Shown: positions 13,876 through 56,339 of the stretch, one piece after another
Position numbering within the stretch: position 1 is the stretch's first letter
Layout: every line of letters begins with the position of its first letter
NCBI RefSeq assembly: GCF_000150275.1
Contig: NW_002060954.1
Span: 62,001 to 126,000, forward strand
DNA from: Trichoplax adhaerens
Taxonomy: Eukaryota > Animalia > Placozoa
Direction of reading: 5' to 3'
DNA: 64,000 nucleotides
Translations under genes and position numbers: made by a program
The notes under the pieces: generated by a model
Told to the model about the DNA's origin: nothing
The model's database searches: none
The model's input: the letters and a program-made list of their open reading frames with translations, nothing else

Positions 13876-16800
13876 TTAGCCGGTTTCTGGCTTCTTATCA
13901 CTAGCTAGATCTGGAAATGATGGTGATAAATTTCCCCAGATTTTAGGAATACTTTCTCCAAAGTATATTTTCGTGTTTTTCGCAAGTGCTTCATATTTTA
14001 TTAACTCTAAATATTGCGGAGTTAACTTTACCTACAACACGATGTAGGAGTAGAACATTCGAAATTTAAATAAATTACATTATGACTTATGCTGTCTAAA
14101 ATTTTAGTCCACCAGAAATTGTTGAAGTAGGACAACACTAACCTTGTTAGAATCGGCTAATTTCGTTGCCGCGTAATACTCTGCATCGGCTGTTACTTTC
14201 AAGCGCGCTACATTACCTTCATCTAATTAAATTTATAAATTAGAAACTTGGTATCGATGCATGATTGCTCAACATAGATAAAATGTTTATGTTAATTTAA
14301 TACTGAAAAGGCAGAAATTATACCTTCGATTTGTGCCATTTTTTTAAGGCTTTGTTTCTCCATAATCTTTTGATCAAATTGAATTTTAGCGACTTGAGCC
14401 TGCTTTTCTGCCTCTGTCGAAAATTGGTTAACAAATATTGCAGAAGTTTCAATACTGAGTGCTCTAGATCTATATTATTTATAAGTCTATCTAGTCTTTA
14501 GTGCTAATTTATTAACAGGATATAATAATATTAAGACCTATTACTGCTCTTTTTCTTTCGGTTTCTGCCTCTTTCTCGACAACTTTCTGCTTTTGTTGCG
14601 AAATTAACAACTTTGTCTTCTCTCCCTCCCTAAGTTTAAGCGTATTTATAGATTGATCTTGTCATTGAATATTGAGAGATAACCTATACAATAATTACTT
14701 ACATTATCTCATAATTCCTCCGAATAGCCTCGGGAATTTTAGGCTTAGTAACGCGAACAGCCTATTTTTGAGAGTATCCAGCAAGAAATATTTCGTTGTT
14801 AATTTGAAGTATATACTCATATTTGCTAGCGTACTAGCTAAGCTGGTTGATAATTGATGCAATATACCTGGATAGTTAATCCTGGTGCCATTAAATCAAG
14901 GTCGTTTTGTAAGGAGATTTTTAAATTTTCGTCAATCTTGTCTGTTCAATAGTTAATTAGATACAAAGTGTCGAATTAGTGCCCAACTGAAATTAAATTA
15001 CGCACCCGACATCTGCATTAGATCAACTCTACAATTATGTAAAGTAATCTTGTTATAATTCTCTGATTTACGAATCGTATGTGTAATTACCGAAGAGGTC
15101 GATGTAAACTTCTTGCAGGTTGTGAACGCTACAAAACTGAAACGATAGACAACTTTTTAAATAGTTAATTAAATAAATCTAAAGAGTTAGCTCCGTATAG
15201 ATGGCGTTTGTATACCTGATTCAATTCATGATGTATTTTATTAAAAATGAGAGTGTTGTCATAATCCGCAGTATAGTTCTTCACAATATCGTAAACTATT
15301 ATTTGAACAAATGCATATTTAGAATGTCTTACTTTGTGTACAAATACTTACATAATATAGCAAGACATAAGAGCATACATCGATATCAACAACATACCAT
15401 GGTTCGAACTTAAAATGTTCACAACTTCGATTCGATCAAAGTAGATCATAACTCCTCCACTACAATTTTAAATAAAATACTTATATATCAATCTCAATTT
15501 CAAAATCTTTTCACTTTATATATATACGTAAATAAATATTTGATAGTACTGTACTGTATGCAAAAGAAACTTTTATCTATGTTTGGAACCAATGTCAGTA
15601 TCATGCCATATAAATGAGAATAATCAATATTTTCTTATATTACAATACGTAATTTGGTGTATTCGTAAAGCAACGTTACCTTGTACCACATGGAACATTC
15701 TTTACTTCATCCGTTTGCAAAGTAGTCTTTTAATTCGTTTATACAGTATATGGACAGTATACAAGTCAACCATTTTACAAATACAAGATTATATGCGAGT
15801 ATGTGTAATATAAGTGCAATAAAAAGCATTATCACTGAAGAATGACGTTACTGCGTTACTACCTTACAACTGCATAAAACGTGATTTGAACGTTAGCGAT
15901 CATAATTTTGAATGTACAGTAGTCCCTACTTACAGTACGAAGCACATTCAAGTAAATAATAATTATACTGTATAGTTACGGTATACGCGTATATATACAG
16001 TATATATAATCTTATATTTTAATAAACCGATGTTCGCTTTGACAGCTACATAGTGAATACAATATATGATATATATATATATACCGTGACAATATACGAA
16101 TACATATATATAATACATATAATTAACCTACAGTATAGTATACAGTACAATGAGCGTTGCATAATTAATAGTTCAAACCTGAACCAGACGATACGTCGTA
16201 AGGAATGGGATCATGACATGAAAGCCTGGCCCGCTAGTTCGTGTTAGAAGAGCCCCACCCTGTAACATAAAGTGTATAGTACAGTATTACGTGTAATCGA
16301 GCCAAGCCTATCACTATCATACAGTTAAATACGTAGAGATTTTCGATTGATAGATTGATTTAAGTTTCAGCATACATCAAAACCCCACGTGTGTAAGAAA
16401 GCAGTATTATTGCATAGTAAACAGTAATGCACTTACCCTATAGTAAACGCCTACGTGTCCTTCAATTTCCAGTATGCATGAAAAAGATCGAATTATCAAC
16501 GATAACCTTAATAATTCTTAATTTTTAAGATTAAACCGCTAAACTAATGGCTGGGTAACAGCATAATACCTATGGCATAATCTCTATAGCATAATACTGT
16601 GCACAGTAGCTTAAGCTGTACTTTTACCATGTATCAGGTACTACAGCAGTCATTTCATGAACTACAGTATAACATTGCTAAGGTTAAGGCACATAAACTG
16701 TATAGGGCATTATGACTGCACTAGTAGCTGTTAGTGTTATTACATTTGCAAAGATAGCAGAATTTTCTACAAGCGTAACGTCTTTTTAAACTACCTTGCA

Positions 16801-45019: not shown

Positions 45020-46396
45020 TCTTCCGTTTTGAATACTTTAGCTCTGCTCTTTTTGCAGTAACTTCCATAAGGAAGCCATGATTAAATATTGATTCGGTTT
45101 GAATTTTCAGTATTGGCTTTCTTCTATAAGCATGTTTAATAAAGGTTGTGATTATTTGTAGCTTTCAGTGTACAAAACTTACTGAGGGTATTGTAAATCT
45201 TGATCAGTAATTTACATTTCTTGCTTGCTAGTTGTTATTGTATTTACCAACTAATAAAATTCTTAATGTAATATCGTCTCGATATTATATCATATTAATA
45301 GCACGCTCGTATACTTACTGTTACACAAATATTGAATATCCTTTTATTACTTTACTCCGTATTAAGCTTGTGAAACAACGCACACTCTGCCAGAAGTTAT
45401 TTCGATTTAGTATAAGAACTTTCTTCCAAGGTCTAATTGGGTTTTCAAAGCAATATATGAATACATCTGAATCGGATATTCACCGATATGTGTCGGAATT
45501 AACCTTTAGGTAGTGAGTTTACTAAATACTTAATATACGAAGGCTGACAGTCTTTATATACGTATGTTAGTAAACAACTCGGTTTAAAGAACAGACATAG
45601 ATTGTATTGCTCTCTTCAATAGAGCAGAGTAACAGGATTAAAATGTTATGTGAAGACATACTGCGATGTTTCGCATATACAATATAACATACCAATTTAG
45701 ATAAGATACTACACAATTCGCAACTACACTCACCCTAACATGGTCGATCATATCGTTTGACTATATTACTAGGCTATGTGTTCAAGGAATGTACCTGACA
45801 AATGTATTCACTAATAAACAAATAGCCTGAATAAACTTAAGCTCTTGTAGCTAACCGAGAAGTAGTCAATCTATTAAGTACTTACTAATTATAAGAAATA
45901 TTAGTTTATGAGACATCGTCATGAATTATCAAGGCGCTTAAATTCAGTAGATACAATATCCTTAGATTTTTAGTTTAAATGCCGGTATAACTGCTGGCGG
46001 CATCTTAAGTATTTTCACTGCATAATCTATATAGGCATAAATTTTCAAAACGCGTGGCATCAGGAATATCACAACTAATACAAGTTAACATTGAAATTCC
46101 TTTCTATTCAAATATTCTGTGTTTGTCCAGTTTAGTAATTCACTTATAACAAATACAAATTTACGGCGATTCAGAAGACTCTGTAATAACACCGTAGCAT
46201 ACGCAGTATATCGCATTTCAACTAGCAATACGTGTACAATAGCTATAGTTAAGATGAAATTTCAATAGAATTTTTCTAATTTTCTATCTTGCACCGCGTC
46301 TTTAATAAAACAACAGTGATCGGCTGTCAGTAGCGCACGTGCATATAATTAATAGGTGTGATCCAATAATTTGGATCCTAGTACTGTAGTACGCTT

Positions 46397-49300
46397 TTAT
46401 ACAGAAGCAGCACCACCACTTCGAGCGCTAGATTGTGCCATCGCCATCTTTTTATCATTTCTATTTTGATAATCGTTGTTGCGATTTAGAAAACTAGGCC
46501 TTCTTCCCCGAAGGAAACTTGGTCTTCGACCTCGAATAAAACTCATCGTCCTTCGTCTGAAATCCCTAATGAAAGCCAGCAAGGGTAACATTTATTTAAT
46601 TGATGCTCCTCTTAATTGCCGCTCCTTAATCAGCTAATATCTAACATGTTTTGAGTAAGCTACGACACTATCATCGAACAGTGTTACAGACAGAAGGTAT
46701 AGCAAAAATCTGTAACGGCTCTGAAAGGGGATTATGTAATCTTTCAGCTTTAAGTACAGTAAATACGCTAGAAACATTTGTATTAGCGACGATAATTATG
46801 ACGTTCGGTATGAATGTATATTCTGTAGCAAATTTGTAAGCGAACCATTAGAAATAACGTATGTTAGATCAAGAACATTAACTCCGGCTATAACAGTAAG
46901 ATAATAACCTCTACCATCAAAGCCTTTTATCACTAAGTTATGCAAGGTAAAAATAAAAGGAAACTAACTCTGAACAGCAAATTCCCATGCGCATGCCGCA
47001 GACCACAGCTCCACTGAATCCAGATAAGAAAACCAAGGCTGTAGAGATCAAACAAGCTAGCAACATGTATAAAGCCATATTTGGCGTAAACGGTAAATTT
47101 AATGTCTGCAATGAGGAATACTGGATAAGAGCAAGAGCTACGTTCACCAAACTTGTAACAACCGTATATGTCGACATGATTACGAAGGTGCTGAGCTGGT
47201 GTTGTTAATGAAAATGATTGTCAGTTAGTATTTCATGAACCCAGCTACATATTGGCTATAAATACTTTGATATTATACTCACTGTTGCTTCAGATTTTTT
47301 ACTCGCAACATCGATACCACAGAGACCTGAAGAAAAAGCCTATACATAATAACGATTCATGAAATAAAAACGGATTTATAATAAGTTCGTGCATATTGAA
47401 ATATGTAGTAATGATAGGAGTACTTACCATAACTGCAACGTAATACGTAAACTGTGTAAAATAAGATCCACGCAATAATATCATAGAGGCAATGCCAGCG
47501 GCCAAACAAAGAAGACCAGAAGCTATTTGACACACTCCGACTTTGTAATGTGCACTTCCGTAAAAGCTGTTACTGTTGCCTGGAGAGCAGAGATTAATCC
47601 CAACATACTTTTGGACAACTATTGCAGCTAACGTAGAAGACATCATTGCAACTAAGCTGGACACTCCAATACCACCAAATATAATTGAAAGCTTTATAGT
47701 CTCTGTTGGCTTTTCGTTAAAATAGCCTATAAAGCCATACGTACAAATACAAAGCGAAACAGGTGCAAGTGCTCTTGACATTAGACATAGTACTCGGAAC
47801 CATATTGCCTGGAAAATAATTTGATTAGATAAATCATACCTGACTTCGTAATAGGAAGGTTAACTAAATGATCCTTACTAGATATACTGTTTTTTTATAT
47901 CTCGATGTAATCCCAAGTGTAGCAGATGTCAGTAACTAAAAAAATACATATTATGTTAATAAGATAATAATAAAATTATCGCTCAAATCTGTCTATCAGA
48001 GGCATTCATTGCTTCAAAATTTTATTAATACCGATACAGCTAGATATAATGGAATTGTTGAAAAAAGCCAGAAAGAATCAAACAAAGAATAAATTCCCAG
48101 GGCAATCAAGATCATGCCGGCAATGAGTTGCGATAGCGATAACTGAAATATGGTAAGACCACAAATGCTTTGATTAAATAAGCTTATATCATCGTCTTCG
48201 CATTCTTGTTCATCGTAACTTCTAAGTTGTAACTCGGAGTTCCGAAGAGTTCCCATTCGTCCTAATTTATTGCCTGATGAAATCGCAACCCATACAATAT
48301 TAGCTAGCGATACTCCTGTCACTGCCATATTTGCTCCAAATATCCCACGTTCGTAAATGCTGTAAATCTTTAAATTATAGATAATAAACATATAGGTACT
48401 TCGAATGGCGTTCACTAAACAAGCAGCAATCACTAGCAAGGCCAGTGCAAACCTTCCTGTATGCTGGAAAAACATAAAATATTATGAGAATTACGGTTCT
48501 AAACTTTATGTTCTTAAAATGTTTAGTAGTTGAGCTGCGATCTATTTATAACGCATTATCATATTATCTATTATTACTTAGTAGCTATACTTTACCAATG
48601 ACTCGTTGTTTCTTTGGCTTAAATAAATCGATGTGAGGCCAGAGGCAAACATCTAAGTATAAAACAAGAAATAACTAACCTTAGGATTAAAGTCCTCAAC
48701 CGAATACTAGTTTTATCGTTTTATACTGTAGTCATTTGAGATTCGTTATTTACTGGATTGACAATTTATTAGCGACAATATTAGTATTATGTTTTAAGTG
48801 ATTATAGAAAATCTATTTAGGCAAACAAGTAAATTTAAAGCTTATTCCTTAGAAATTTTTATTTCTTAACATAAGTTATTCTTTAATTAGTACCATTGAT
48901 GGAACATTTTTACTTCAGTATAACAATCGAATTTCAATTTCGTCAAAGTTACAACCCCTAGATTAAAATGGCGGCTAATAATTTATTCGAAATTTTGGTC
49001 CGTTATTATTATTTTTCTTATGGTTACATCTTACGGTCATAAAATTGTTTACTGATAAGCATTTACCAAGCCCTAATAACTTTTGCTTGCGTAAACTTAT
49101 AATACCAGATAGCATCAAGTAACTTCCATTAAAATGTAAGTACTACTAATCTGTATTTAAAACGATCTAAAACTTGTACAAATATAGATAATTATAACCG
49201 GATATGCAAAACTATAAAATTTAAATTTTAATTGAGATCCTTTCTGTACTGGCGGTGATCTTACATTCACTGGACTAATAAAAGCTACTATGTGCAGTAA

Positions 49301-49970
49301 TATGTTTTTATACGACCAAATCTATTATTATAATTATCAGTCGAATGTACATGGTGACGGTAGCATTCTTGGAATAAATAAAAATATGAATATCTACTTT
49401 AAAAGTTAGAGTTTGCGTAAAACTGCACATACAATTGTGCAGAAAATATCAAATCAAGTGCACTCTACATAAGGGATCGATTGCTACAGATAGCGCGGTT
49501 TACAACAGTGGTCAAACGTATAATATCGCATTTAATGTAATTTCATTTTCAACCCAAAGACAGTTTTAAAGAAAGACTTTGGCATTTCTCATTAACGTAT
49601 GTTTACGCTTAAGCTTTGTAGCATGAGTTTTAAATTCGTCTGAAATTGATGATACTGTACAATATTATTGTACCCGGATATACAGGTCCTGTACATGTAA
49701 TCGTAAACTGTAGAAGCAATATTTGTGATTGATAATTTTAATACGATTATGAATATACGCCTGTACCAAAGGTAAGTTTCTCGTTAGGTAACTTTTTTTC
49801 TAATTGTGCGTATTTACCGAAATCCCTAGCATTCCTGGATCGAGTAATAGGGTCAGAGCCTGTAAGGAATCGAATCCTAGATTCCCTCTAAAATACCACG
49901 ATAAAACCGCGACAGCGAGACTGCATGCAGCTAGGCATAACTGAATAACGGCAACTGTTATGTACGCCAT
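46397..49970 (-). CDS. Triple MS4A/CD20-like tetraspan-repeat membrane protein A (~510 aa, ~12 TM); exons 49818-49970, 48596-48652, 48032-48463, 47879-47935, 47428-47808, 47283-47339, 46969-47195, 46397-46565
   Basis: All junctions are GT-AG and in frame. There are three 57-nt phase-0 micro-exons (MFASGLTSIYLSQRNNESL, LLTSATLGITSRYKKTVYL, AFSSGLCGIDVASKKSEAT). TM1-type motifs VAVIQLCLA, LSLSQLIAGMILIALG and VGVCQIASGLLCLAAG resemble CD20 LGAVQIMNGLFHIALG. The cytosolic tail is basic. Confidence 0.85.
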
Positions 49971-51643
49971 GGACACAAATTTAATAATATCATACAGCTA
50001 CCATCCGGAAACTAATGAGGAAATTATCTGTTGTCAACTCTACGACCTTAATACGGAATAAGTTAATAGTCATTGAGGGCCCAAATGTCTGTTTGCTTGA
50101 CGTCAGCTAACTATTTAAATATTTACTCTATTTATAACCACTCACAAACGAAGAAAATTTGGCTCTTGGCACGGAAAGATTTTTAAATAAACAAGATACA
50201 GTACTGCTACCGAATTTTAACAGTTAATTAATTTTATGTTGAGTTGTACCGTACAATATAGCTACCTACTCGATCTACTTGATATTGATTTATGAGAACT
50301 CAAAATAGTTATAATTACATAATTTAACGACAATTATAATTACCTAACTTGTAGCAAGGAAAATATGATAGTTATTACCAGTATATATTATTAAAGCTTA
50401 GGATATCTACATAATCGCATCAAGTACGCAGACAAGACTACAACTGTGTATGCGTATGATCTAGATGTCGAAAACCTCTAAACAACAAAATACTGAACTC
50501 ATCATATCAGAAGGATTTCAGTGCCAATACGCATATAAAGGCTTTCTTGAAATAAAACCCTACATTTGTACGTGCATTAGATCATCGCTTTATTAGATTT
50601 GGGGTTAGTGTTAGATTGCTTCAAAAGATGTTCCAAATTCCTTAATTGTTCCATATTATTAACTGCAAATAAAGCTATACTATATCTAATGCAGGATAGC
50701 TTCGAGTAATAGCAGGAGTACTCTGATATTTGTGCTAAGAAATATATATTTAACAAAATGTATCAATCATGAAGATTTCATTACATAAAAAAATATATAA
50801 ATCCCCAAGTAAAAGGAGCATATAAAGATTTACTACACTACGTTTTAATAATCTGCGCATTATACAGAGCCGGACTAGCCCTGCGAAGACATTATTGTAT
50901 TGTACAGTGCTACAGATTGATCAGTCATCCAACTGAACAATAATATACTCGTATATACGCGTATATATTATATACTGTACGCCTTTCTTCCGTAGAGTTT
51001 ATTGCTATATAATATGATTATTAATTAATTGATCAAAATGAAAACTGTTAAATTGTATCAATGTATAATGTACACATTTATACCTGTACATGTGTGTATG
51101 AATAAGGGAATTTAATAGAGTACAGAATGTCTTCTACTTAAATTTTATAATTACAATAAAAATATAATTAAGGTGTTTCTAAAGCGATATTAGCACGATT
51201 GCGTTTAGAGAGTTACTCTAATGAACTTGTAATTCTACTGTATTGTAGGTAAACTACATAACACCGTATAAATTAATATACAATGGAATTAATTAATAGA
51301 TCCGAGATTCCATGCTGTACTGTATCTCAGTTACAATATCAATGGTACAGCTACATGCGGCTATAATCTCTGTACATCAAGTTAATAACGTCGTTCCTGC
51401 CATTAGAGCACTACCGTACTGTACACAAGGAAGGACTTTTTTCCTTTTCAATAGTCCCTAGTCCCTGCCGTACAGTACTGTAATCCTTAAATGTATGTTA
51501 ATGATATCTAATTTGTATAACAATAGAACAATTGTTTAAGCCTATTTGCAAGCGATCCTTCAAAACGCTAGCTGCGGAAGCGTTATACCAGTCTTCACCA
51601 AAGGAAGAAAGGCGTTTTCTAAAGTGTAATCAGACGCTTAAAA

Positions 51644-54600
51644 ATGTATAAAACTTGCGGAATTATCAAAATATTTTTTTCTCTTGGCTTAGCAACTTGT
51701 GCTATCCTAGGATGGAATGAACTACGCAATCTGCCACATGCTTGGAGCTCTTCAGCGCTTATTGATCCTTTTATGCTTGCCGTGATGGTAACAAGTCGAT
51801 ATATGACTACATAATTATTTTAATCAAACCTTTTCACGCGACCTACGCGATCATTAAAATTTGATTGATGCCCAGTTATTTCAAGTACTATTGAAATTAT
51901 AAATGCCTAAGCTCTTTACTTAAGTTATATGACTAATGTAAGATATCAGACTTTAAATTTTGCAGCTACCTAAGCAATAAAAATTGAGCAAGAGCCAACA
52001 GTCAGTCCCTTTTGAATTTAGGCGCAAACGAGTGTAGCATGATTACTATTTAAGCTAGTTGACGTACTGTACGCATGACATAGGAAAAATAATTTACTAC
52101 TAGCTGGAAGCTAGTTCTTTCAGTACTTCATCCATAATAAACGCTGCTAAATGAGCTTTTTGATGGCAGAAACATATATATGTAACATGTAGTACCAAAA
52201 TAATCAGAATTAAGCTTTTATTTAAAGAAAATTTCGGTTTTCTAAATATTCAGAAAGAAACTACTGACTACACGTATAAACTATAGATTGTAGTGAGGTG
52301 GCAATTAATAAATGCTTACTATAGTAGCTATAAAATTTACCGCGCTAAGAGAATGTATAATATTTGTATTATAACTGTGTATTATGTAATTATTAATATA
52401 TGGAATAGCAAATTTAATTGAGTCTAATAGGTTGAAACTAATTGAGCTTCATCACTATTCACGAAATGATTTTAGGCAATTACAGCTGGTTCACTATCAA
52501 TCAAATATGACAATGTTAACTCTGTACCGCTGGTAAGCAACTCAGATATATCAGCGTAGATAGTTCATATTGTAATGTACAGGACAATTAAATCTAGGAA
52601 ACCCATACGTTACTGCTGATGTTACATTGTGCTCATTTAACTAATTTAAGGACCATGGGTTCCGGTAGTTCTTCGGTCATTAAAGTCATTAATTTTGCTG
52701 TACTATATTGAATGTATGCGTATATTTATGCCGTAATCAAATTTGATATGGATTAATTAATTGATTAATTGTTTTTAACCATGTTTTACTTCATCTGCTC
52801 GTGACCTTAAAAATCTTCTATTTATACTTGCTTAGACGACTGGTTTAATAGCTTTCAGCATCTATGAGGCTACTTTTGCTGCTGTTAACATCTGCCGTGG
52901 AACTATTGCTTTCTATAAATCTGGGTCAAATTTCAAGCAATCTCCGCCTGTTTTATACGGATTTAACATGGGTTTTTCAATTTTCTTCTTTATCACTTCT
53001 TTGGCTGTGGCAACATTTAATGGTTTCAAGCTAGATAGCTTCAAAACAACTGAAATTAAAGACCCAAATTATCGATTCCCTATCAATCGTCGCCTTCAGA
53101 TCGCTGTCTTAATGCTGGTAAATTCACTTATCATGCATATCGTTGGATTCGTTTTGGTGGGAACAGTTCCTAAACACTACTCTTTACCTTTAAATTACCA
53201 GGGAGCAATGGTAAATATCTCACATCTATTGGATAATTAGATGAGTGAATTAGGTTTAGCAAATCATTATTTTATATGGATTTATTCTAATACGACTGCT
53301 CATTGTGCTGAACTTGTAACAATACCATAAATAACGATCTAATTTAACTTATTACAGTTAGAAGTCGCGGGAATTCTTGGGATATTAAGCTACGCAACAA
53401 ATCAAAAGAGTATTGTAAGTTAAATTTTAAATCATTTATTAGCTTAGCTACGATAATATATAATTCGAGCTTGAGATCTTAACAAATTTTAAGAATCTTT
53501 GAACTATAGTTTTAAAACATTTATCGTTATTGCAATATCAGGTAGCTTGGTTTAAAGTTAGCGCGATATTAGCGTCAATATCTGCTTTACTTACTGGCTT
53601 TGCTTCCGTTCATGATCGGCTATACATGCTAATGGGAAGCAGCCCTTCGAAACCTATGGGATCAAATATGCTAATTCTCATGATACTTCACGATGTTACA
53701 CCATACATTGGATTAGGCCTTTCGTTATTTGCTGCCTTTGCAGTTGATACCGAAACTGATACCAATGTTAATATTGAGAAGCAGCCCAAAACAGATAAGA
53801 ACTACTGCATTGGTAATTCCTCAATGATTTTTGCTAGCATTCAGCTTGGTTGCGCTGTTGCGATTTCGCCGATGTTCCCGTCGCCTTTTCATAGTTTCCT
53901 GAGTTTCGTCGTTGCTTCACTTGTAAGTGGATATGTAATAACAAGTTATATTTAATAATGTAATTTAGATATACCGTAGTTAATGTTCCTCTGCTGTATC
54001 GTAAATTTTACGACAAATTCCGAAGTACCATCCATTCTGTAAATATATCATTGCAACAGGAAGTATACACCACATAGGCGTCTTCAATTATAATCAATTG
54101 TTAACTAATCATGTAATTAAAATGTAGAAGATAATTTGGCAATTATAGTCATGACATTTTGTAGTATAAACATTTGTATGCAAAAATCAATTTTTTGGAA
54201 AGTCACGGAAAAATCAGCAAAAACCCCTTTTAATGTTAACGAAATCTACAAAGCTCTCTTATATTTGAATTGTACTTCATCAAGATTTGACTCGATATTT
54301 TTAGATTTGGATAAATTATTTTATTACGCCGATAAATGATACTCAACTCAATTATCTTATTATTTTAACTATGTGTCCATATACGTATTACAGTTATTTG
54401 CTTTAGGAATCTTAGCTCATCTATCCTCGAAAACAACATGCGAATCCTTAGTAAGTATTTTGGTTGTAGGGTTCATTAGATCAGTAACTTTGTTCCTAAG
54501 TGTTTATGCCATGCGTTGTGTTTCCACTCTTAGTCGTTAACGTTAGCACGAGGGACTTTGATACACTCCCCATAGTAAGCTTACTAAAAGTCTCTTTTAT

Positions 54601-55014
54601 TTAGGATTTACTACATTTAAATAGCATAGCCGTAATAACGTATTATACCCTCATCTTAGTAATTCATTACCTTATCTTATGCTAACACATTAGGTGCAGT
54701 ACAACAAGTTACTGTATTCTTACATACAGTACATAACACCATGCTAATGTGGTCTTTATGATCTTTCATTTTAATAGAGAGTAAGCACTTATTCATTCAC
54801 AATCCTGAGTATCTCCTCGGTATGTATCAATGTGATCGCCCTAACGGTTATCTATGTTGTCACCAATCCTTACGGTTCTGGGATACGAGGTATTGATTTG
54901 GCAATTCTAATCGTTGAGGTTATTAATGCAATCTTGTTTATGCTATTTGGTTCACGGGCAGCCGAATATAATCCTGTGACATACATTAGAGAAAGGAGTG
55001 GTACTGAAGTTTAA
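51644..55014 (+). CDS. Triple MS4A/CD20-like tetraspan-repeat membrane protein B (~435 aa, ~12 TM); exons 51644-51787, 52476-52532, 52836-53210, 53358-53414, 53542-53922, 54394-54450, 54778-55014
   Basis: All introns are phase 0 GT-AG. Three 57-nt micro-exons (AITAGSLSIKYDNVNSVPL, LEVAGILGILSYATNQKSI, LFALGILAHLSSKTTCESL). Exon-by-exon correspondence with protein A: LIDPFMLAVM vs LLDPGMLGIS; VAWFKV vs AIWFRV; exon 5 is 381 nt in both. Ends SGTEV*. Confidence 0.85.
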
Positions 55015-56339
55015 GATTTGGTCGTAATTCTGCTTCTGACATTCTATAGCTTAAATAGCTAATCTACAGTATGTTTAACTGGTTATAGCGTTTTTTTACC
55101 GTTTGAGTCACTTTATGTCTTAATGGTAACTGATCTTAGTGTGATCGATCTGTTAAATGTATGCTGTGCATTCATAATAGAATTAGAAATATACCATTAG
55201 AATCTTGTAATTTCGAAATAATTGCGGCGTGTATAGTGGCGAGGTTGCAATATGCGTACGTACAGTATTACAAACACAGAATTCAAAAGTTTTTTATGTA
55301 GCAACGTCAGGAGTTCGATAGAAATAAATAATATTTTGTGATTGTCGAAGTTCTGAATTTATTAAGTGTCAAATGATGAGTTTATTTACTCTATTATAAC
55401 CGTGATTGGCGACCGTAGACTGATGTAACGTGACTATGATCTGCCATCATAGCTCTGCAACCTCATCAGCAGCATATTTATCAAATCTCTAGAGATCGGT
55501 ATCATCAATATCATATAGTAGGAAAAGTCGAAACTGTTGCCTATCTTTCAACATTTGATAATGTAGTTACAGTACAGTACATTAGGTAACTAAATTTGAC
55601 TCCTTACATGCATTAGTTTTACAATTGCCTCAGAATTTGCTATTTTTAATTTGTAACAGCAGTCCTAAATGCTTTCAGCATTTCGATATGCATGTATAGC
55701 AGATCACCTTTACTAGTATTACAACCTACGTAAGATATTTTGTTGATACCTTTGTACATCGAAAAAATCCGTTTTTACAGTCTCCCTGGTCATATGACTA
55801 ACTCAAGAAATTGATGTAATCATAGATAGTAATTTTAGGTTCGATTTATGGTTTCGATGAGATTGATAGTCACATCCACACAACATTATTTTATCCCGGT
55901 TTAAGTCGCATTACACTTTATAAAGTATTCCGTTAATCTATAATCAAATTCATTCGGTGTAATGCTCATGCATCACCTATCATCTCCACTATTAGATGAA
56001 ATTTACTTTTTATTTAAGGCTATTAAGGCATTACAGTATCTTGTAAGTGAAATACTAACTTTATCAATAAAGAAGCAAAAGATGCACAATCAAAGTACAT
56101 GGTATTTAACGAATAGGCAAACTACCTACACAATTTTATCCTTAATGTACATCAGTTAAGCTAACAATTACTTTCAAATAATATCTAGATAAATGTTACG
56201 ACGGATATATCTTTACTGATACAGTATTAACACGACCTTCATGCAGTAGCATAAACAAGCAACACGGACATCGGAAATCGAAACATCAATTAAATTTCTC
56301 CCGCAGTCTGCATTATAGTATAATTACAACCAAATTGTT

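What the first reader, a model, noticed from the sequence alone, without database searches (positions are those of the whole stretch)
46397..55014. Head-to-head pair of 12-TM proteins, each made of three concatenated MS4A/CD20-like domains: candidate new receptor/channel system
Seen: two divergently transcribed genes (ATGs at 49970 and 51644) share an exon plan of first exon, then three rounds of a 57-nt phase-0 micro-exon plus a long hydrophobic exon. All six micro-exons encode 19 aa of the form xxxx[G/A]xxxx+polar loop (e.g. AITAGSLSIKYDNVNSVPL). Each unit has four hydrophobic segments, and TM1 usually carries a Q-[IL] motif (SQLIAGMILIALG, VCQIASGLLCLAAG). Established (recalled): MS4A/CD20/TMEM176 proteins are single 4-TM units with TM1 G..QI..GL, and a segment YIISGSLLAATEKNSRKCL that I recall being encoded by its own 57-nt exon. 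They oligomerise, are linked to cation/Ca2+ flux, and some act as non-GPCR chemosensors in the mouse necklace olfactory system. Inference: an ancestral MS4A gene was triplicated internally, fixing a pseudo-trimer in one chain, and then duplicated in inverted orientation. The two highly diverged paralogues may be co-expressed, possibly as a heteromer, and serve as a chemosensory or ion-conducting system in what appears to be a nerve-less animal. I know of no description of such concatenated MS4As.
Basis: partly seen in the sequence, partly recalled or inferred. Interest (0 to 1): 0.9.

Follow-up and report, generated by a model that had tools for sequence, protein, structure and literature searches.

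The report
Divergent pair of triple CD20-like genes
Two back-to-back Trichoplax genes each make one 12-helix membrane protein built from three very diverged CD20/MS4A-type four-helix units; they are real, transcribed and conserved, belong to a larger placozoan family, and have no known function.

Summary
In Trichoplax adhaerens, gene A (minus strand, 49970-46397, 8 exons, 508-510 aa) and gene B (plus strand, 51644-55014, 7 exons, 435 aa) are transcribed divergently. Each has a first exon followed by three rounds of a 57-nt phase-0 micro-exon plus a long hydrophobic exon, giving 12 predicted helices.

RNA contigs join all seven exons of B at the predicted junctions, and one junction of A. Gene B equals a listed Trichoplax sp. 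H2 protein letter for letter.

Pfam CD20 does not hit either protein. Kinship is still supported. A gene of the same genome whose H2 relative is a bona fide CD20-family protein carries the same 57-nt micro-exon at the same place. The three intron-matching alignment diagonals rank 1, 2 and 3 of 569. An exon-anchored unit profile matches the Trichoplax CD20 profile in exact register (hhalign P 2.3e-7; shuffles reach 20 against 46.7).

Gene A is under purifying selection (dN/dS about 0.09).

It is not just a pair. A third triple gene lies 15 kb beyond the window, and this scan has already reported several such genes elsewhere in this genome. Tandem MS4A proteins were predicted in vertebrates in 2010.

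No function is shown. The channel, chemoreceptor and heteromer ideas are untested.

The parts
49818..49970 (-). Gene A exon 1 (coding part): start codon, helix 1 and first half of helix 2. The 5' end of the RNA lies at about 50007-50020.
   Evidence: RNA contigs end at 50007/50013/50020, and a loose end at 49818 reads into micro-exon 1; 100% match to the H2 gene call.
48596..48652 (-). Gene A micro-exon 1: 57 nt, phase 0, second half of helix 2 plus a short polar loop.
   Evidence: AG/GT. (junction with exon 1 seen in three RNA runs). (57 nt conserved in a distant placozoan).
48038..48463 (-). Gene A long exon 1: helices 3 and 4, a linker, helix 5 and the first half of helix 6. The donor is ambiguous (48037, or 6 nt further).
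   Evidence: start-of-exon register ranks 1 of 276; 87% aa identity to L010.
47879..47935 (-). Gene A micro-exon 2 (57 nt, phase 0).
47428..47808 (-). Gene A long exon 2: helices 7 and 8, a linker, helix 9 and the first half of helix 10.
47283..47339 (-). Gene A micro-exon 3 (57 nt, phase 0).
46969..47195 (-). Gene A long exon 3: helices 11 and 12. It ends in a phase-2 donor.
   Evidence: donor position conserved in L010.
46397..46565 (-). Gene A tail exon: basic cytoplasmic tail with RRRT and two copies of RGRRPSFL, then the stop codon.
   Evidence: the exon's end equals the end of the H2 gene call; the motif block is identical in a distant placozoan.
50021..51586 (.). Intergenic spacer between the two RNA 5' ends, about 1.57 kb. 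ATG to ATG is 1673 nt.
   Evidence: no RNA depth over most of it in X15 and X17; the same divergent arrangement in H2.
51587..51787 (+). Gene B exon 1: 5' UTR from 51587, ATG at 51644, helix 1 and the first half of helix 2.
52476..52532 (+). Gene B micro-exon 1 (57 nt, phase 0).
   Evidence: both joints; 57 nt conserved in L012.
52836..53210 (+). Gene B long exon 1: helices 3 and 4, a linker, helix 5 and the first half of helix 6.
   Evidence: The older model TRIADDRAFT_64204 cuts 31 aa from its end; RNA supports 53210.
53358..53414 (+). Gene B micro-exon 2 (57 nt, phase 0).
   Evidence: rank 1 of 153.
53542..53922 (+). Gene B long exon 2: helices 7 and 8, a linker, helix 9 and the first half of helix 10.
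54394..54450 (+). Gene B micro-exon 3 (57 nt, phase 0).
   Evidence: rank 1 of 153.
54778..55014 (+). Gene B last coding exon: helices 11 and 12, a short C-terminus and the stop codon. The RNA contig runs at least 233 nt further.
   Evidence: rank 1 of 212.

Best explanation
Two divergently transcribed paralogous genes of Trichoplax adhaerens each encode one 12-helix membrane protein made of three head-to-tail four-helix units. The units are very diverged members of the CD20/MS4A-like superfamily.

Each unit keeps the exon plan of the animal's own single-unit CD20-like genes. One exon ends in the middle of helix 2. A 57-nt phase-0 micro-exon encodes the rest of helix 2 and the short cytoplasmic turn. 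The next exon starts at helix 3.

Unit joining fused the last exon of one unit to the first exon of the next. The micro-exon plus fused exon then formed a phase-0 cassette that could be duplicated by recombination within introns (inferred). The triplication came before the split into genes A, B and the neighbouring gene C.

How it works is inferred only. Each unit has an even number of helices, so all three units sit the same way in the membrane, and the chain fixes a three-unit assembly of a protein type that normally works as an oligomer. External loops are only about 10-20 residues. Polar residues recur inside helices: Q in helix 1 of 5 of the 6 units, and N in helix 3 of several units by my reading of the exon translations.

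My best guess, at about 0.3, is a compact membrane-embedded adaptor or modulator of ion flux or of partner-protein trafficking, not a ligand-binding surface receptor. Gene A alone adds a conserved basic tail with three sites of the basophilic-kinase type, which suggests regulation by phosphorylation.

The confidence given below is for identity and architecture, not for function.
For: - Gene models and splice sites.
- One RNA contig spans all B exons; the first A junction is seen.
- B equals P0004, TrispH2_000256, letter for letter. A maps onto a 510-aa H2 gene call.
- Twelve helices in each protein.
- P0005, a Trichoplax sp. H2 protein, passes Pfam CD20 at 44 bits and hits human CD20 at E 1.7e-6.
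- Its paralogue in this genome (L006) has the same three-exon plan, with a 57-nt phase-0 micro-exon at L006:1803-1859.
- Diagonal scan of the Trichoplax CD20 mini-profile against P0004: the three diagonals that superpose the intron positions rank 1, 2 and 3 of 569.
- Taken exon by exon, the starts of all six long exons match helix 3 in the intron-defined register, at ranks 1, 3, 2, 6, 8 and 1 of 209-276.
- hhalign of the exon-anchored unit profile against the CD20 mini-profile: Prob 93.5, P 2.3e-7, score 46.7, exact register. The reversed profile scores 14.4. Hydropathy-preserving shuffles score 13.4 +/- 3.0, maximum 20.
- A alone gives P 6.4e-7 and B alone gives P 4.6e-6.
- BLASTP of P0004 against P0005: the best HSP is in register, E 0.05.
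- ESM Atlas leads (not proof): feature neighbours are CD20 and MLC1 clusters, and a structural match to an MS4A4A cluster has TM 0.56 over residues 138-290.
- Purifying selection on A: dN/dS 0.09, with all exon lengths conserved in a distant placozoan. B is also conserved.
- Family context: gene C has the same plan, and C units against A+B units give P 1.9e-8 in register. Units are positionally orthologous.
Against: - Pfam CD20 gives no hit at E up to 10 on any exon, on P0001 or on full-length P0004.
- Searches of PDB sequences with P0004 and with a six-row half-unit profile are blank.
- Single B units against the CD20 mini-profile are only marginal (P 0.11, 0.009, 0.0008).
- The CD20 mini-profile is tiny (Neff 1.6) and comes from placozoans only.
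- The AlphaFold2 model is unusable (pLDDT 42.7), so there is no independent fold test.
- Atlas scores of 0.83-0.85 are in the range that shuffled proteins often reach.
- Part of the in-register signal comes from the micro-exon motif that prompted the idea, although helix 3 supports the register on its own.
- Nothing tests function.
Confidence: 0.78

Rival explanations
1. The units belong to the same broad four-helix group, but their nearest vertebrate relative is MLC1 or TMEM196 rather than MS4A proper. MLC1 is an eight-helix protein with a 4+4 internal repeat that forms trimers. On this reading the placozoan proteins would be 4+4+4 versions of an MLC1-like scaffold.
For: MLC1 clusters (PF27925) score as high as CD20 clusters in the ESM Atlas feature search, both for the whole protein and for unit 1. 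One Atlas cluster mixes both Pfam families. MLC1 has a 4+4 structural repeat and forms homotrimers (PMC9144339).
Against: These are language-model leads only, at scores of 0.83-0.85. PF27925 is not in the local Pfam copy, so it could not be tested. The only tested, significant links are to a Trichoplax protein that passes Pfam CD20 and to its paralogues. The shared micro-exon is shown for CD20-like genes only.
Confidence: 0.15
2. This is a new four-helix repeat family unrelated to CD20/MS4A. The motif, the topology and the 57-nt exon would then be convergent or chance resemblances among small hydrophobic proteins.
For: There is no Pfam or PDB sequence hit. Zuccolo et al. warned that short MS4A-like similarities occur in unrelated membrane proteins (PMC2826416). 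Pairwise scores are marginal.
Against: Two intron positions, their phase and an identical 57-nt exon length are shared with a CD20-family gene of the same genome. The profile match is in exact register and about 11 s.d. above hydropathy-preserving shuffles. It is seen independently for A, for B and, more weakly, for C.
Confidence: 0.06
3. This is a 12-helix solute transporter of a known fold, such as MFS, and its four-helix periodicity is incidental.
For: There are twelve helices and about 435-510 residues. MFS models appear among the Atlas structural neighbours.
Against: The MFS matches have TM of only 0.26-0.33. No transporter family is found in Pfam. The repeat unit is four helices, marked three times by the same exon cassette, not 6+6 or 3+3.
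Confidence: 0.01

Closest known systems
Single-unit CD20/MS4A-like proteins (Pfam PF04103), in particular Trichoplax sp. H2 'MS4A8' (P0005) and its paralogue at G000:C1409:5090381-5091248
   Same: A four-helix unit. The intron falls in mid-helix 2, followed by a 57-nt phase-0 micro-exon for the rest of helix 2 plus the cytoplasmic turn, and the next exon starts at helix 3. The profile similarity is in exact register.
   Different: Three units in one chain. There are almost no cytoplasmic tails in B, and the outer loops are very short. The sequences are too diverged for the Pfam model. The loop between helices 1 and 2 is 4-7 residues shorter.
[quoted passage not shown] 2010, PMC2826416)
   Same: Several MS4A units concatenated in one predicted polypeptide. 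The authors read this as support for oligomeric function.
   Different: Those have 2 or 6 units that are readily recognisable as MS4A, and they were predicted from genomic sequence. Here there are exactly 3 very diverged units with RNA support, conserved across placozoans and expanded into a gene family.
MLC1 (Pfam PF27925)
   Same: More than one four-helix repeat in one chain (4+4). It oligomerises as a trimer and is viewed as tetraspanin-like (PMC9144339). It is a feature-space neighbour in the ESM Atlas.
   Different: It has eight helices, not twelve. Kinship could not be tested here.
Other triple CD20-like genes of this genome
   Same: The same exon plan (first exon of 153 nt, three 57-nt micro-exons, long exons of about 380-440 nt). 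Unit profiles match at P 1.9e-8. Units are positionally orthologous.
   Different: There is no BLAST-level similarity to A or B. A and B are the only head-to-head pair I examined.

Membership tests
CD20/MS4A-like (Pfam PF04103) | Match to the Pfam CD20 model above its gathering score (27.9 bits) | tested here: not met
   No CD20 hit at E up to 10 on the single exons of A and B, on P0001 or on full-length P0004. The positive control P0005 scores 44 bits.
CD20/MS4A-like (Pfam PF04103) | Significant profile similarity to bona fide members, in a consistent register | tested here: met
   hhalign P 2.3e-7 (score 46.7), against 14.4 for the reversed profile and at most 20 in 60 block shuffles. A alone gives 6.4e-7 and B alone 4.6e-6. 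The reference profile is small and placozoan only.
CD20/MS4A-like (Pfam PF04103) | Family-typical gene structure: phase-0 introns flanking a 57-nt exon for the second half of helix 2 | tested here: met
   The CD20-family gene in L006 has exons ending at 1626, spanning 1803-1859 (57 nt) and starting at 2069, all phase 0. The same holds in all six units of A and B. I did not check the vertebrate exon structure: human DNA was not examined, and no paper was found.
CD20/MS4A-like (Pfam PF04103) | Four membrane helices per unit with a short turn between helices 2 and 3 | tested here: met
   Hydropathy and model secondary structure give 12 helices, that is 3 x 4. The orientation in the membrane was not tested.
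CD20/MS4A-like (Pfam PF04103) | Fold superposable on solved CD20 or Fc epsilon RI beta structures | tested here: inconclusive
   The single-sequence AlphaFold2 model has pLDDT 42.7 and was not searched. The Atlas's own model gives an MS4A4A cluster at TM 0.56 for residues 138-290, which is a lead only.
MLC1 (Pfam PF27925) | Match to the Membrane_MLC1 model; 4+4 repeat | not testable with these tools
   The family is absent from the local Pfam copy. Only Atlas feature scores of 0.83-0.84 exist.
Major facilitator superfamily or other 12-helix transporters | Pfam match and a 6+6 fold | tested here: not met
   No transporter family in Pfam. Atlas structural TM is 0.26-0.33. The repeat period is four helices.

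The most novel reading that the evidence does not exclude
The three units of each chain fold around a common axis into a pseudo-trimeric pore or ligand pocket lined by the recurrent helix-1 Q and helix-3 N residues. The co-transcribed A and B proteins would then form part of a placozoan-specific repertoire of MS4A-derived channels or chemoreceptors in an animal without neurons. Gene A would be gated or trafficked through phosphorylation of its conserved RRxS tail.
Probability: 0.1. Interest if true: 0.8.

Novelty: new variant of a known kind. Interest (0 to 1): 0.5.

Why it matters
MS4A proteins (CD20, Fc epsilon RI beta, the olfactory MS4As) matter medically and as chemoreceptors, yet their working oligomeric state and mechanism remain disputed. 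A 2010 survey concluded that invertebrates lack them.

A conserved, expressed placozoan family in which three CD20-like units are welded into one chain pushes the superfamily back to early animals. It also offers natural fixed-stoichiometry versions for structural and functional study.

The shared 57-nt micro-exon is a useful marker for finding relatives too diverged for sequence models.

For this particular locus the gain is modest. It adds two more members, and a head-to-head arrangement, to a family that this scan has already met several times.

Tried and rejected
- Pfam on each exon, on P0001 and on P0004 gave no CD20 and no other credible family. The same held for gene C exons.
- phmmer of P0004, and hmmsearch with a six-row half-unit profile, against PDB sequences were both blank.
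- A profile of the four long exons against 1.84 billion representatives found only placozoan sequences: P0001, P0002 and P0003. The same profile in the own genome found only its own four exons.
None reached non-placozoan CD20 proteins, so I could not build a broad CD20 alignment.
- AlphaFold2 on P0004 without an alignment gave pLDDT 42.7. I did not send it to fold search because matches would be meaningless.
- An alignment meant to deepen the MSA stacked the paralogue fragments wrongly, so I did not use the second fold job.
- PF27925 (MLC1) is not in the local library.
- Paper searches for the gene identifier, for MS4A in Trichoplax and for a 57-bp MS4A exon found nothing useful.
- Rfam found nothing in 46000-55400.
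- tblastn of A and B exons against the 60 kb beyond the window found nothing significant.

Joined step left out: gene A has no database reference that I could obtain. Its spliced model was never joined or sent to a search or fold tool. It was analysed exon by exon, by reference, with fragments kept as separate alignment rows. The joined form of gene B was used only as database protein P0004.

I re-ran it with references only.

I asked for no complex-prediction job, because I do not claim that A and B bind.
Full report
**Source**

The window is G000:C1403:62001-126000 of a 105,631,681-bp assembly. One product of the locus is listed as TRIADDRAFT_64204 of Trichoplax adhaerens, on a contig of 1,942,820 bp, which is the length of C1403. 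The organism is therefore T. adhaerens.

**Observation**

I rebuilt both genes from open frames and splice signals.

- Gene B (plus strand) has seven exons, all joined by phase-0 introns, and gives 435 aa.
- Gene A (minus strand) has the same seven-exon plan plus an eighth tail exon behind a phase-2 intron, and gives 508 aa.
- In both genes the first exon is followed three times by a 57-nt micro-exon and a long hydrophobic exon. All boundaries are AG/GT.

In three random-primed RNA-seq runs the contigs skip exactly the six predicted introns of B. One 1598-nt contig carries all seven exons, starts at 51587 and runs 233 nt past the stop codon. For A, contigs end at 50007-50020, and a loose end at 49818 reads straight into micro-exon 1.

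The remaining A junctions rest on three things: splice signals, the Trichoplax sp. H2 annotation, and conservation in a distant placozoan.

- The H2 gene call has the same start and end. All eight exons map at 99.6-100%, and the product is 510 aa.
- The distant placozoan contig L010 keeps all exon lengths and splice sites.
- The 2-aa difference from my model probably reflects a second GT 6 nt beyond the weak donor at 48037.

The spliced B model equals database protein P0004 (TrispH2_000256) letter for letter. The older model P0001 (TRIADDRAFT_64204, 404 aa) lacks 31 residues because of a wrong donor. The RNA supports the 435-aa form.

Hydropathy and helix prediction give 12 helices in each protein. 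Helices 2, 6 and 10 are split by the intron in front of each micro-exon.

Plain unit-to-unit similarity is barely above noise.

**What it is**

Direct family searches fail.

- Pfam CD20 hits neither the exons nor the full-length B protein.
- PDB sequence searches are blank.
- A profile of the long exons finds only placozoan sequences among 1.84 billion representatives.

I therefore looked for true CD20-family genes in the same genome. This led to P0005, the Trichoplax sp. H2 protein named 'MS4A8'. It passes Pfam CD20 at 44 bits and hits human CD20 and Fc epsilon RI beta in the PDB.

Its paralogue in locus L006 has three exons. The first carries helix 1 plus the first half of helix 2. The second is a 57-nt phase-0 micro-exon. 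The third carries helices 3 and 4. That is exactly the unit plan of A and B.

I then tested whether sequence similarity, which knows nothing of introns, picks the same register.

- Diagonal scan. In an ungapped scan of a small Trichoplax CD20 profile against P0004, the three diagonals that superpose the micro-exon boundaries rank 1, 2 and 3 of 569.
- Exon by exon. The starts of all six long exons match CD20 helix 3 in the intron-defined register, at ranks 1, 3, 2, 6, 8 and 1 of more than 200 diagonals. The micro-exons rank 1-3 in five of six cases. Helix 1 matches on near-register diagonals, which implies a loop 4-7 residues shorter.
- Profile against profile. I built a unit profile anchored only on exon boundaries, with the A pieces kept as separate rows. 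Against the CD20 profile, hhalign gives Prob 93.5, P 2.3e-7 and score 46.7 over 76 columns in exact register. The reversed profile scores 14.4. Sixty shuffles that keep the hydropathy pattern score 13.4 +/- 3.0, maximum 20.
- Each gene alone. A alone and B alone each reach P of about 1e-6.
- Tool checks. These agree in register but are weak on their own: protein comparison gives P 0.0086, and BLASTP gives E 0.05.
- ESM Atlas. It gives leads in the same direction. CD20 and MLC1 clusters are the nearest by features. An MS4A4A cluster is the best structural neighbour of the middle unit (TM 0.56), while MFS models reach only about 0.3.

My own AlphaFold2 model was too poor to use, so the fold test remains open.

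**Selection and conservation**

Against a distant placozoan contig, gene A keeps every exon length. This includes the three 57-nt exons and the phase-2 donor. Amino-acid identity is 72-89%, dS is about 1.1, dN about 0.10 and dN/dS about 0.09. A fragment of B from another placozoan keeps micro-exon 1 and long exon 1.

**Family context**

This scan's earlier notes list several 'triple CD20-like' genes elsewhere in this genome, including three just beyond this window.

I checked one of them, gene C at C1403:141121-142981 on the minus strand. It has the same plan, down to a 153-nt first coding exon, and all its boundaries are AG/GT in phase 0. Its unit profile matches the A+B profile at P 1.9e-8, column for column; the reversed control scores 14.2.

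Across A, B and C, units at the same position score higher (mean 35.7) than units at different positions (10.4) or units within one gene (5.6). A Mann-Whitney test gives p 0.007, though the pairs are not independent. It produced a family rather than just a pair.

**Mechanism**

What is shown: two transcribed, conserved genes that each encode a single chain of 3 x 4 helices, with units akin to CD20-like proteins.

What is inferred:

- The units all face the same way in the membrane.
- The concatenation fixes a three-unit assembly.
- The cassette of micro-exon plus fused exon, flanked by phase-0 introns, allowed a unit to be added by recombination within introns.

The external loops are short, so a surface ligand receptor seems unlikely. 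Recurrent polar residues inside helices, together with the known roles of MS4A, TMEM176 and MLC1 proteins, make a membrane adaptor or modulator of ion flux my best guess, at about 0.3.

Gene A has a basic tail with RRRT and two RGRRPSFL copies. This block is identical in the distant species and suggests regulation by a kinase.

Co-regulation of A and B is only suggested. Their 5' ends are 1.57 kb apart, the arrangement is kept in H2, and both are present in the same three RNA runs. Contig depth cannot rank expression.

**Comparison with what is known**

Zuccolo et al. 2010 (PMC2826416) already predicted tandem MS4A proteins with 2 or 6 subunits in chicken, platypus and opossum. The same paper concluded that invertebrates lack MS4A-like genes. 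MLC1 is a 4+4 repeat protein that forms trimers (PMC9144339).

The present proteins are a new architecture within a known kind: exactly three very diverged units, ancient within placozoans and expanded into a family. I found no paper on them. H2 lists B as a hypothetical protein.

**Limits**

Gene A's spliced model was never joined or searched as a whole, and that step is left out. The CD20 reference profile is small. No fold test or functional test was possible.

**Verdict**

Architecture, kinship and order of events are supported. Function, the heteromer idea and the claim of no precedent are not.

Noticed in passing
window 53118-53210 (end of gene B long exon 1): The public T. adhaerens model TRIADDRAFT_64204 (P0001, 404 aa) omits 31 residues, most of helix 5 and the start of helix 6. 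RNA joints and the H2 protein support the 435-aa form.
   Followed up: yes
window 54514-54720 (gene B intron 6): A dispersed repeat of about 208 bp with at least 40 copies of 81-94% identity across the genome. It shows a strong depth spike and many loose ends in the sequencing runs. I did not determine its type.
   Followed up: partly
window 49100-49847 (gene A intron 1): RNA contigs cover most of this intron, including the unspliced exon 1/intron boundary. Inverted joints sit at the RNA's 5' end (49780|50007 in X15; a loose end at 50020 in X16 reads into the sense strand of long exon 1). These are probably nascent RNA plus fold-back cDNA artefacts, but an independent transcript is not excluded.
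   Followed up: partly
window 46397-46565 (gene A tail exon): A basic C-terminal tail with RRRT and two copies of RGRRPSFL, which are consensus sites of the basophilic-kinase type. The block is identical in a distant placozoan although dS is about 1.1. Gene B instead ends in a T-E-V carboxy terminus that fits a class I PDZ-ligand pattern. I did not check conservation of that ending.
   Followed up: partly
window 48031-48037: Two possible GT donors lie 6 nt apart at the end of gene A long exon 1. This would explain 508 aa (my model) against 510 aa (H2 annotation). Both GTs are also present in the distant placozoan.
   Followed up: partly
G000:C1403:141121-142981 (-), 143966-146000 (+), 179593-182010 (+); loci L021, L023, L026: Further triple genes lie 15-56 kb beyond the window's end. 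I annotated the first (gene C) and it matches A and B at profile level. The other two show long hydrophobic exons, and one also a candidate 57-nt micro-exon, but I did not model them.
   Followed up: partly
G000:C1409:5090381-5098282 (loci L006, L008, L013-L019) and C1408:3618838-3618963 (L007): Single-unit CD20-like genes of T. adhaerens: two tandem paralogues on C1409, and a separate gene on C1408 whose first helix carries an MS4A-like LGAIQ motif. The H2 orthologue of one is named MS4A8.
   Followed up: partly
L009:1-3375 and 14696-16502 (H2 locus flanking the pair): The neighbours of the pair in H2 are a TIP49/RuvB-like ATPase gene and a ubiquitin-conjugating E2 gene. There is no obvious functional link.
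   Followed up: no
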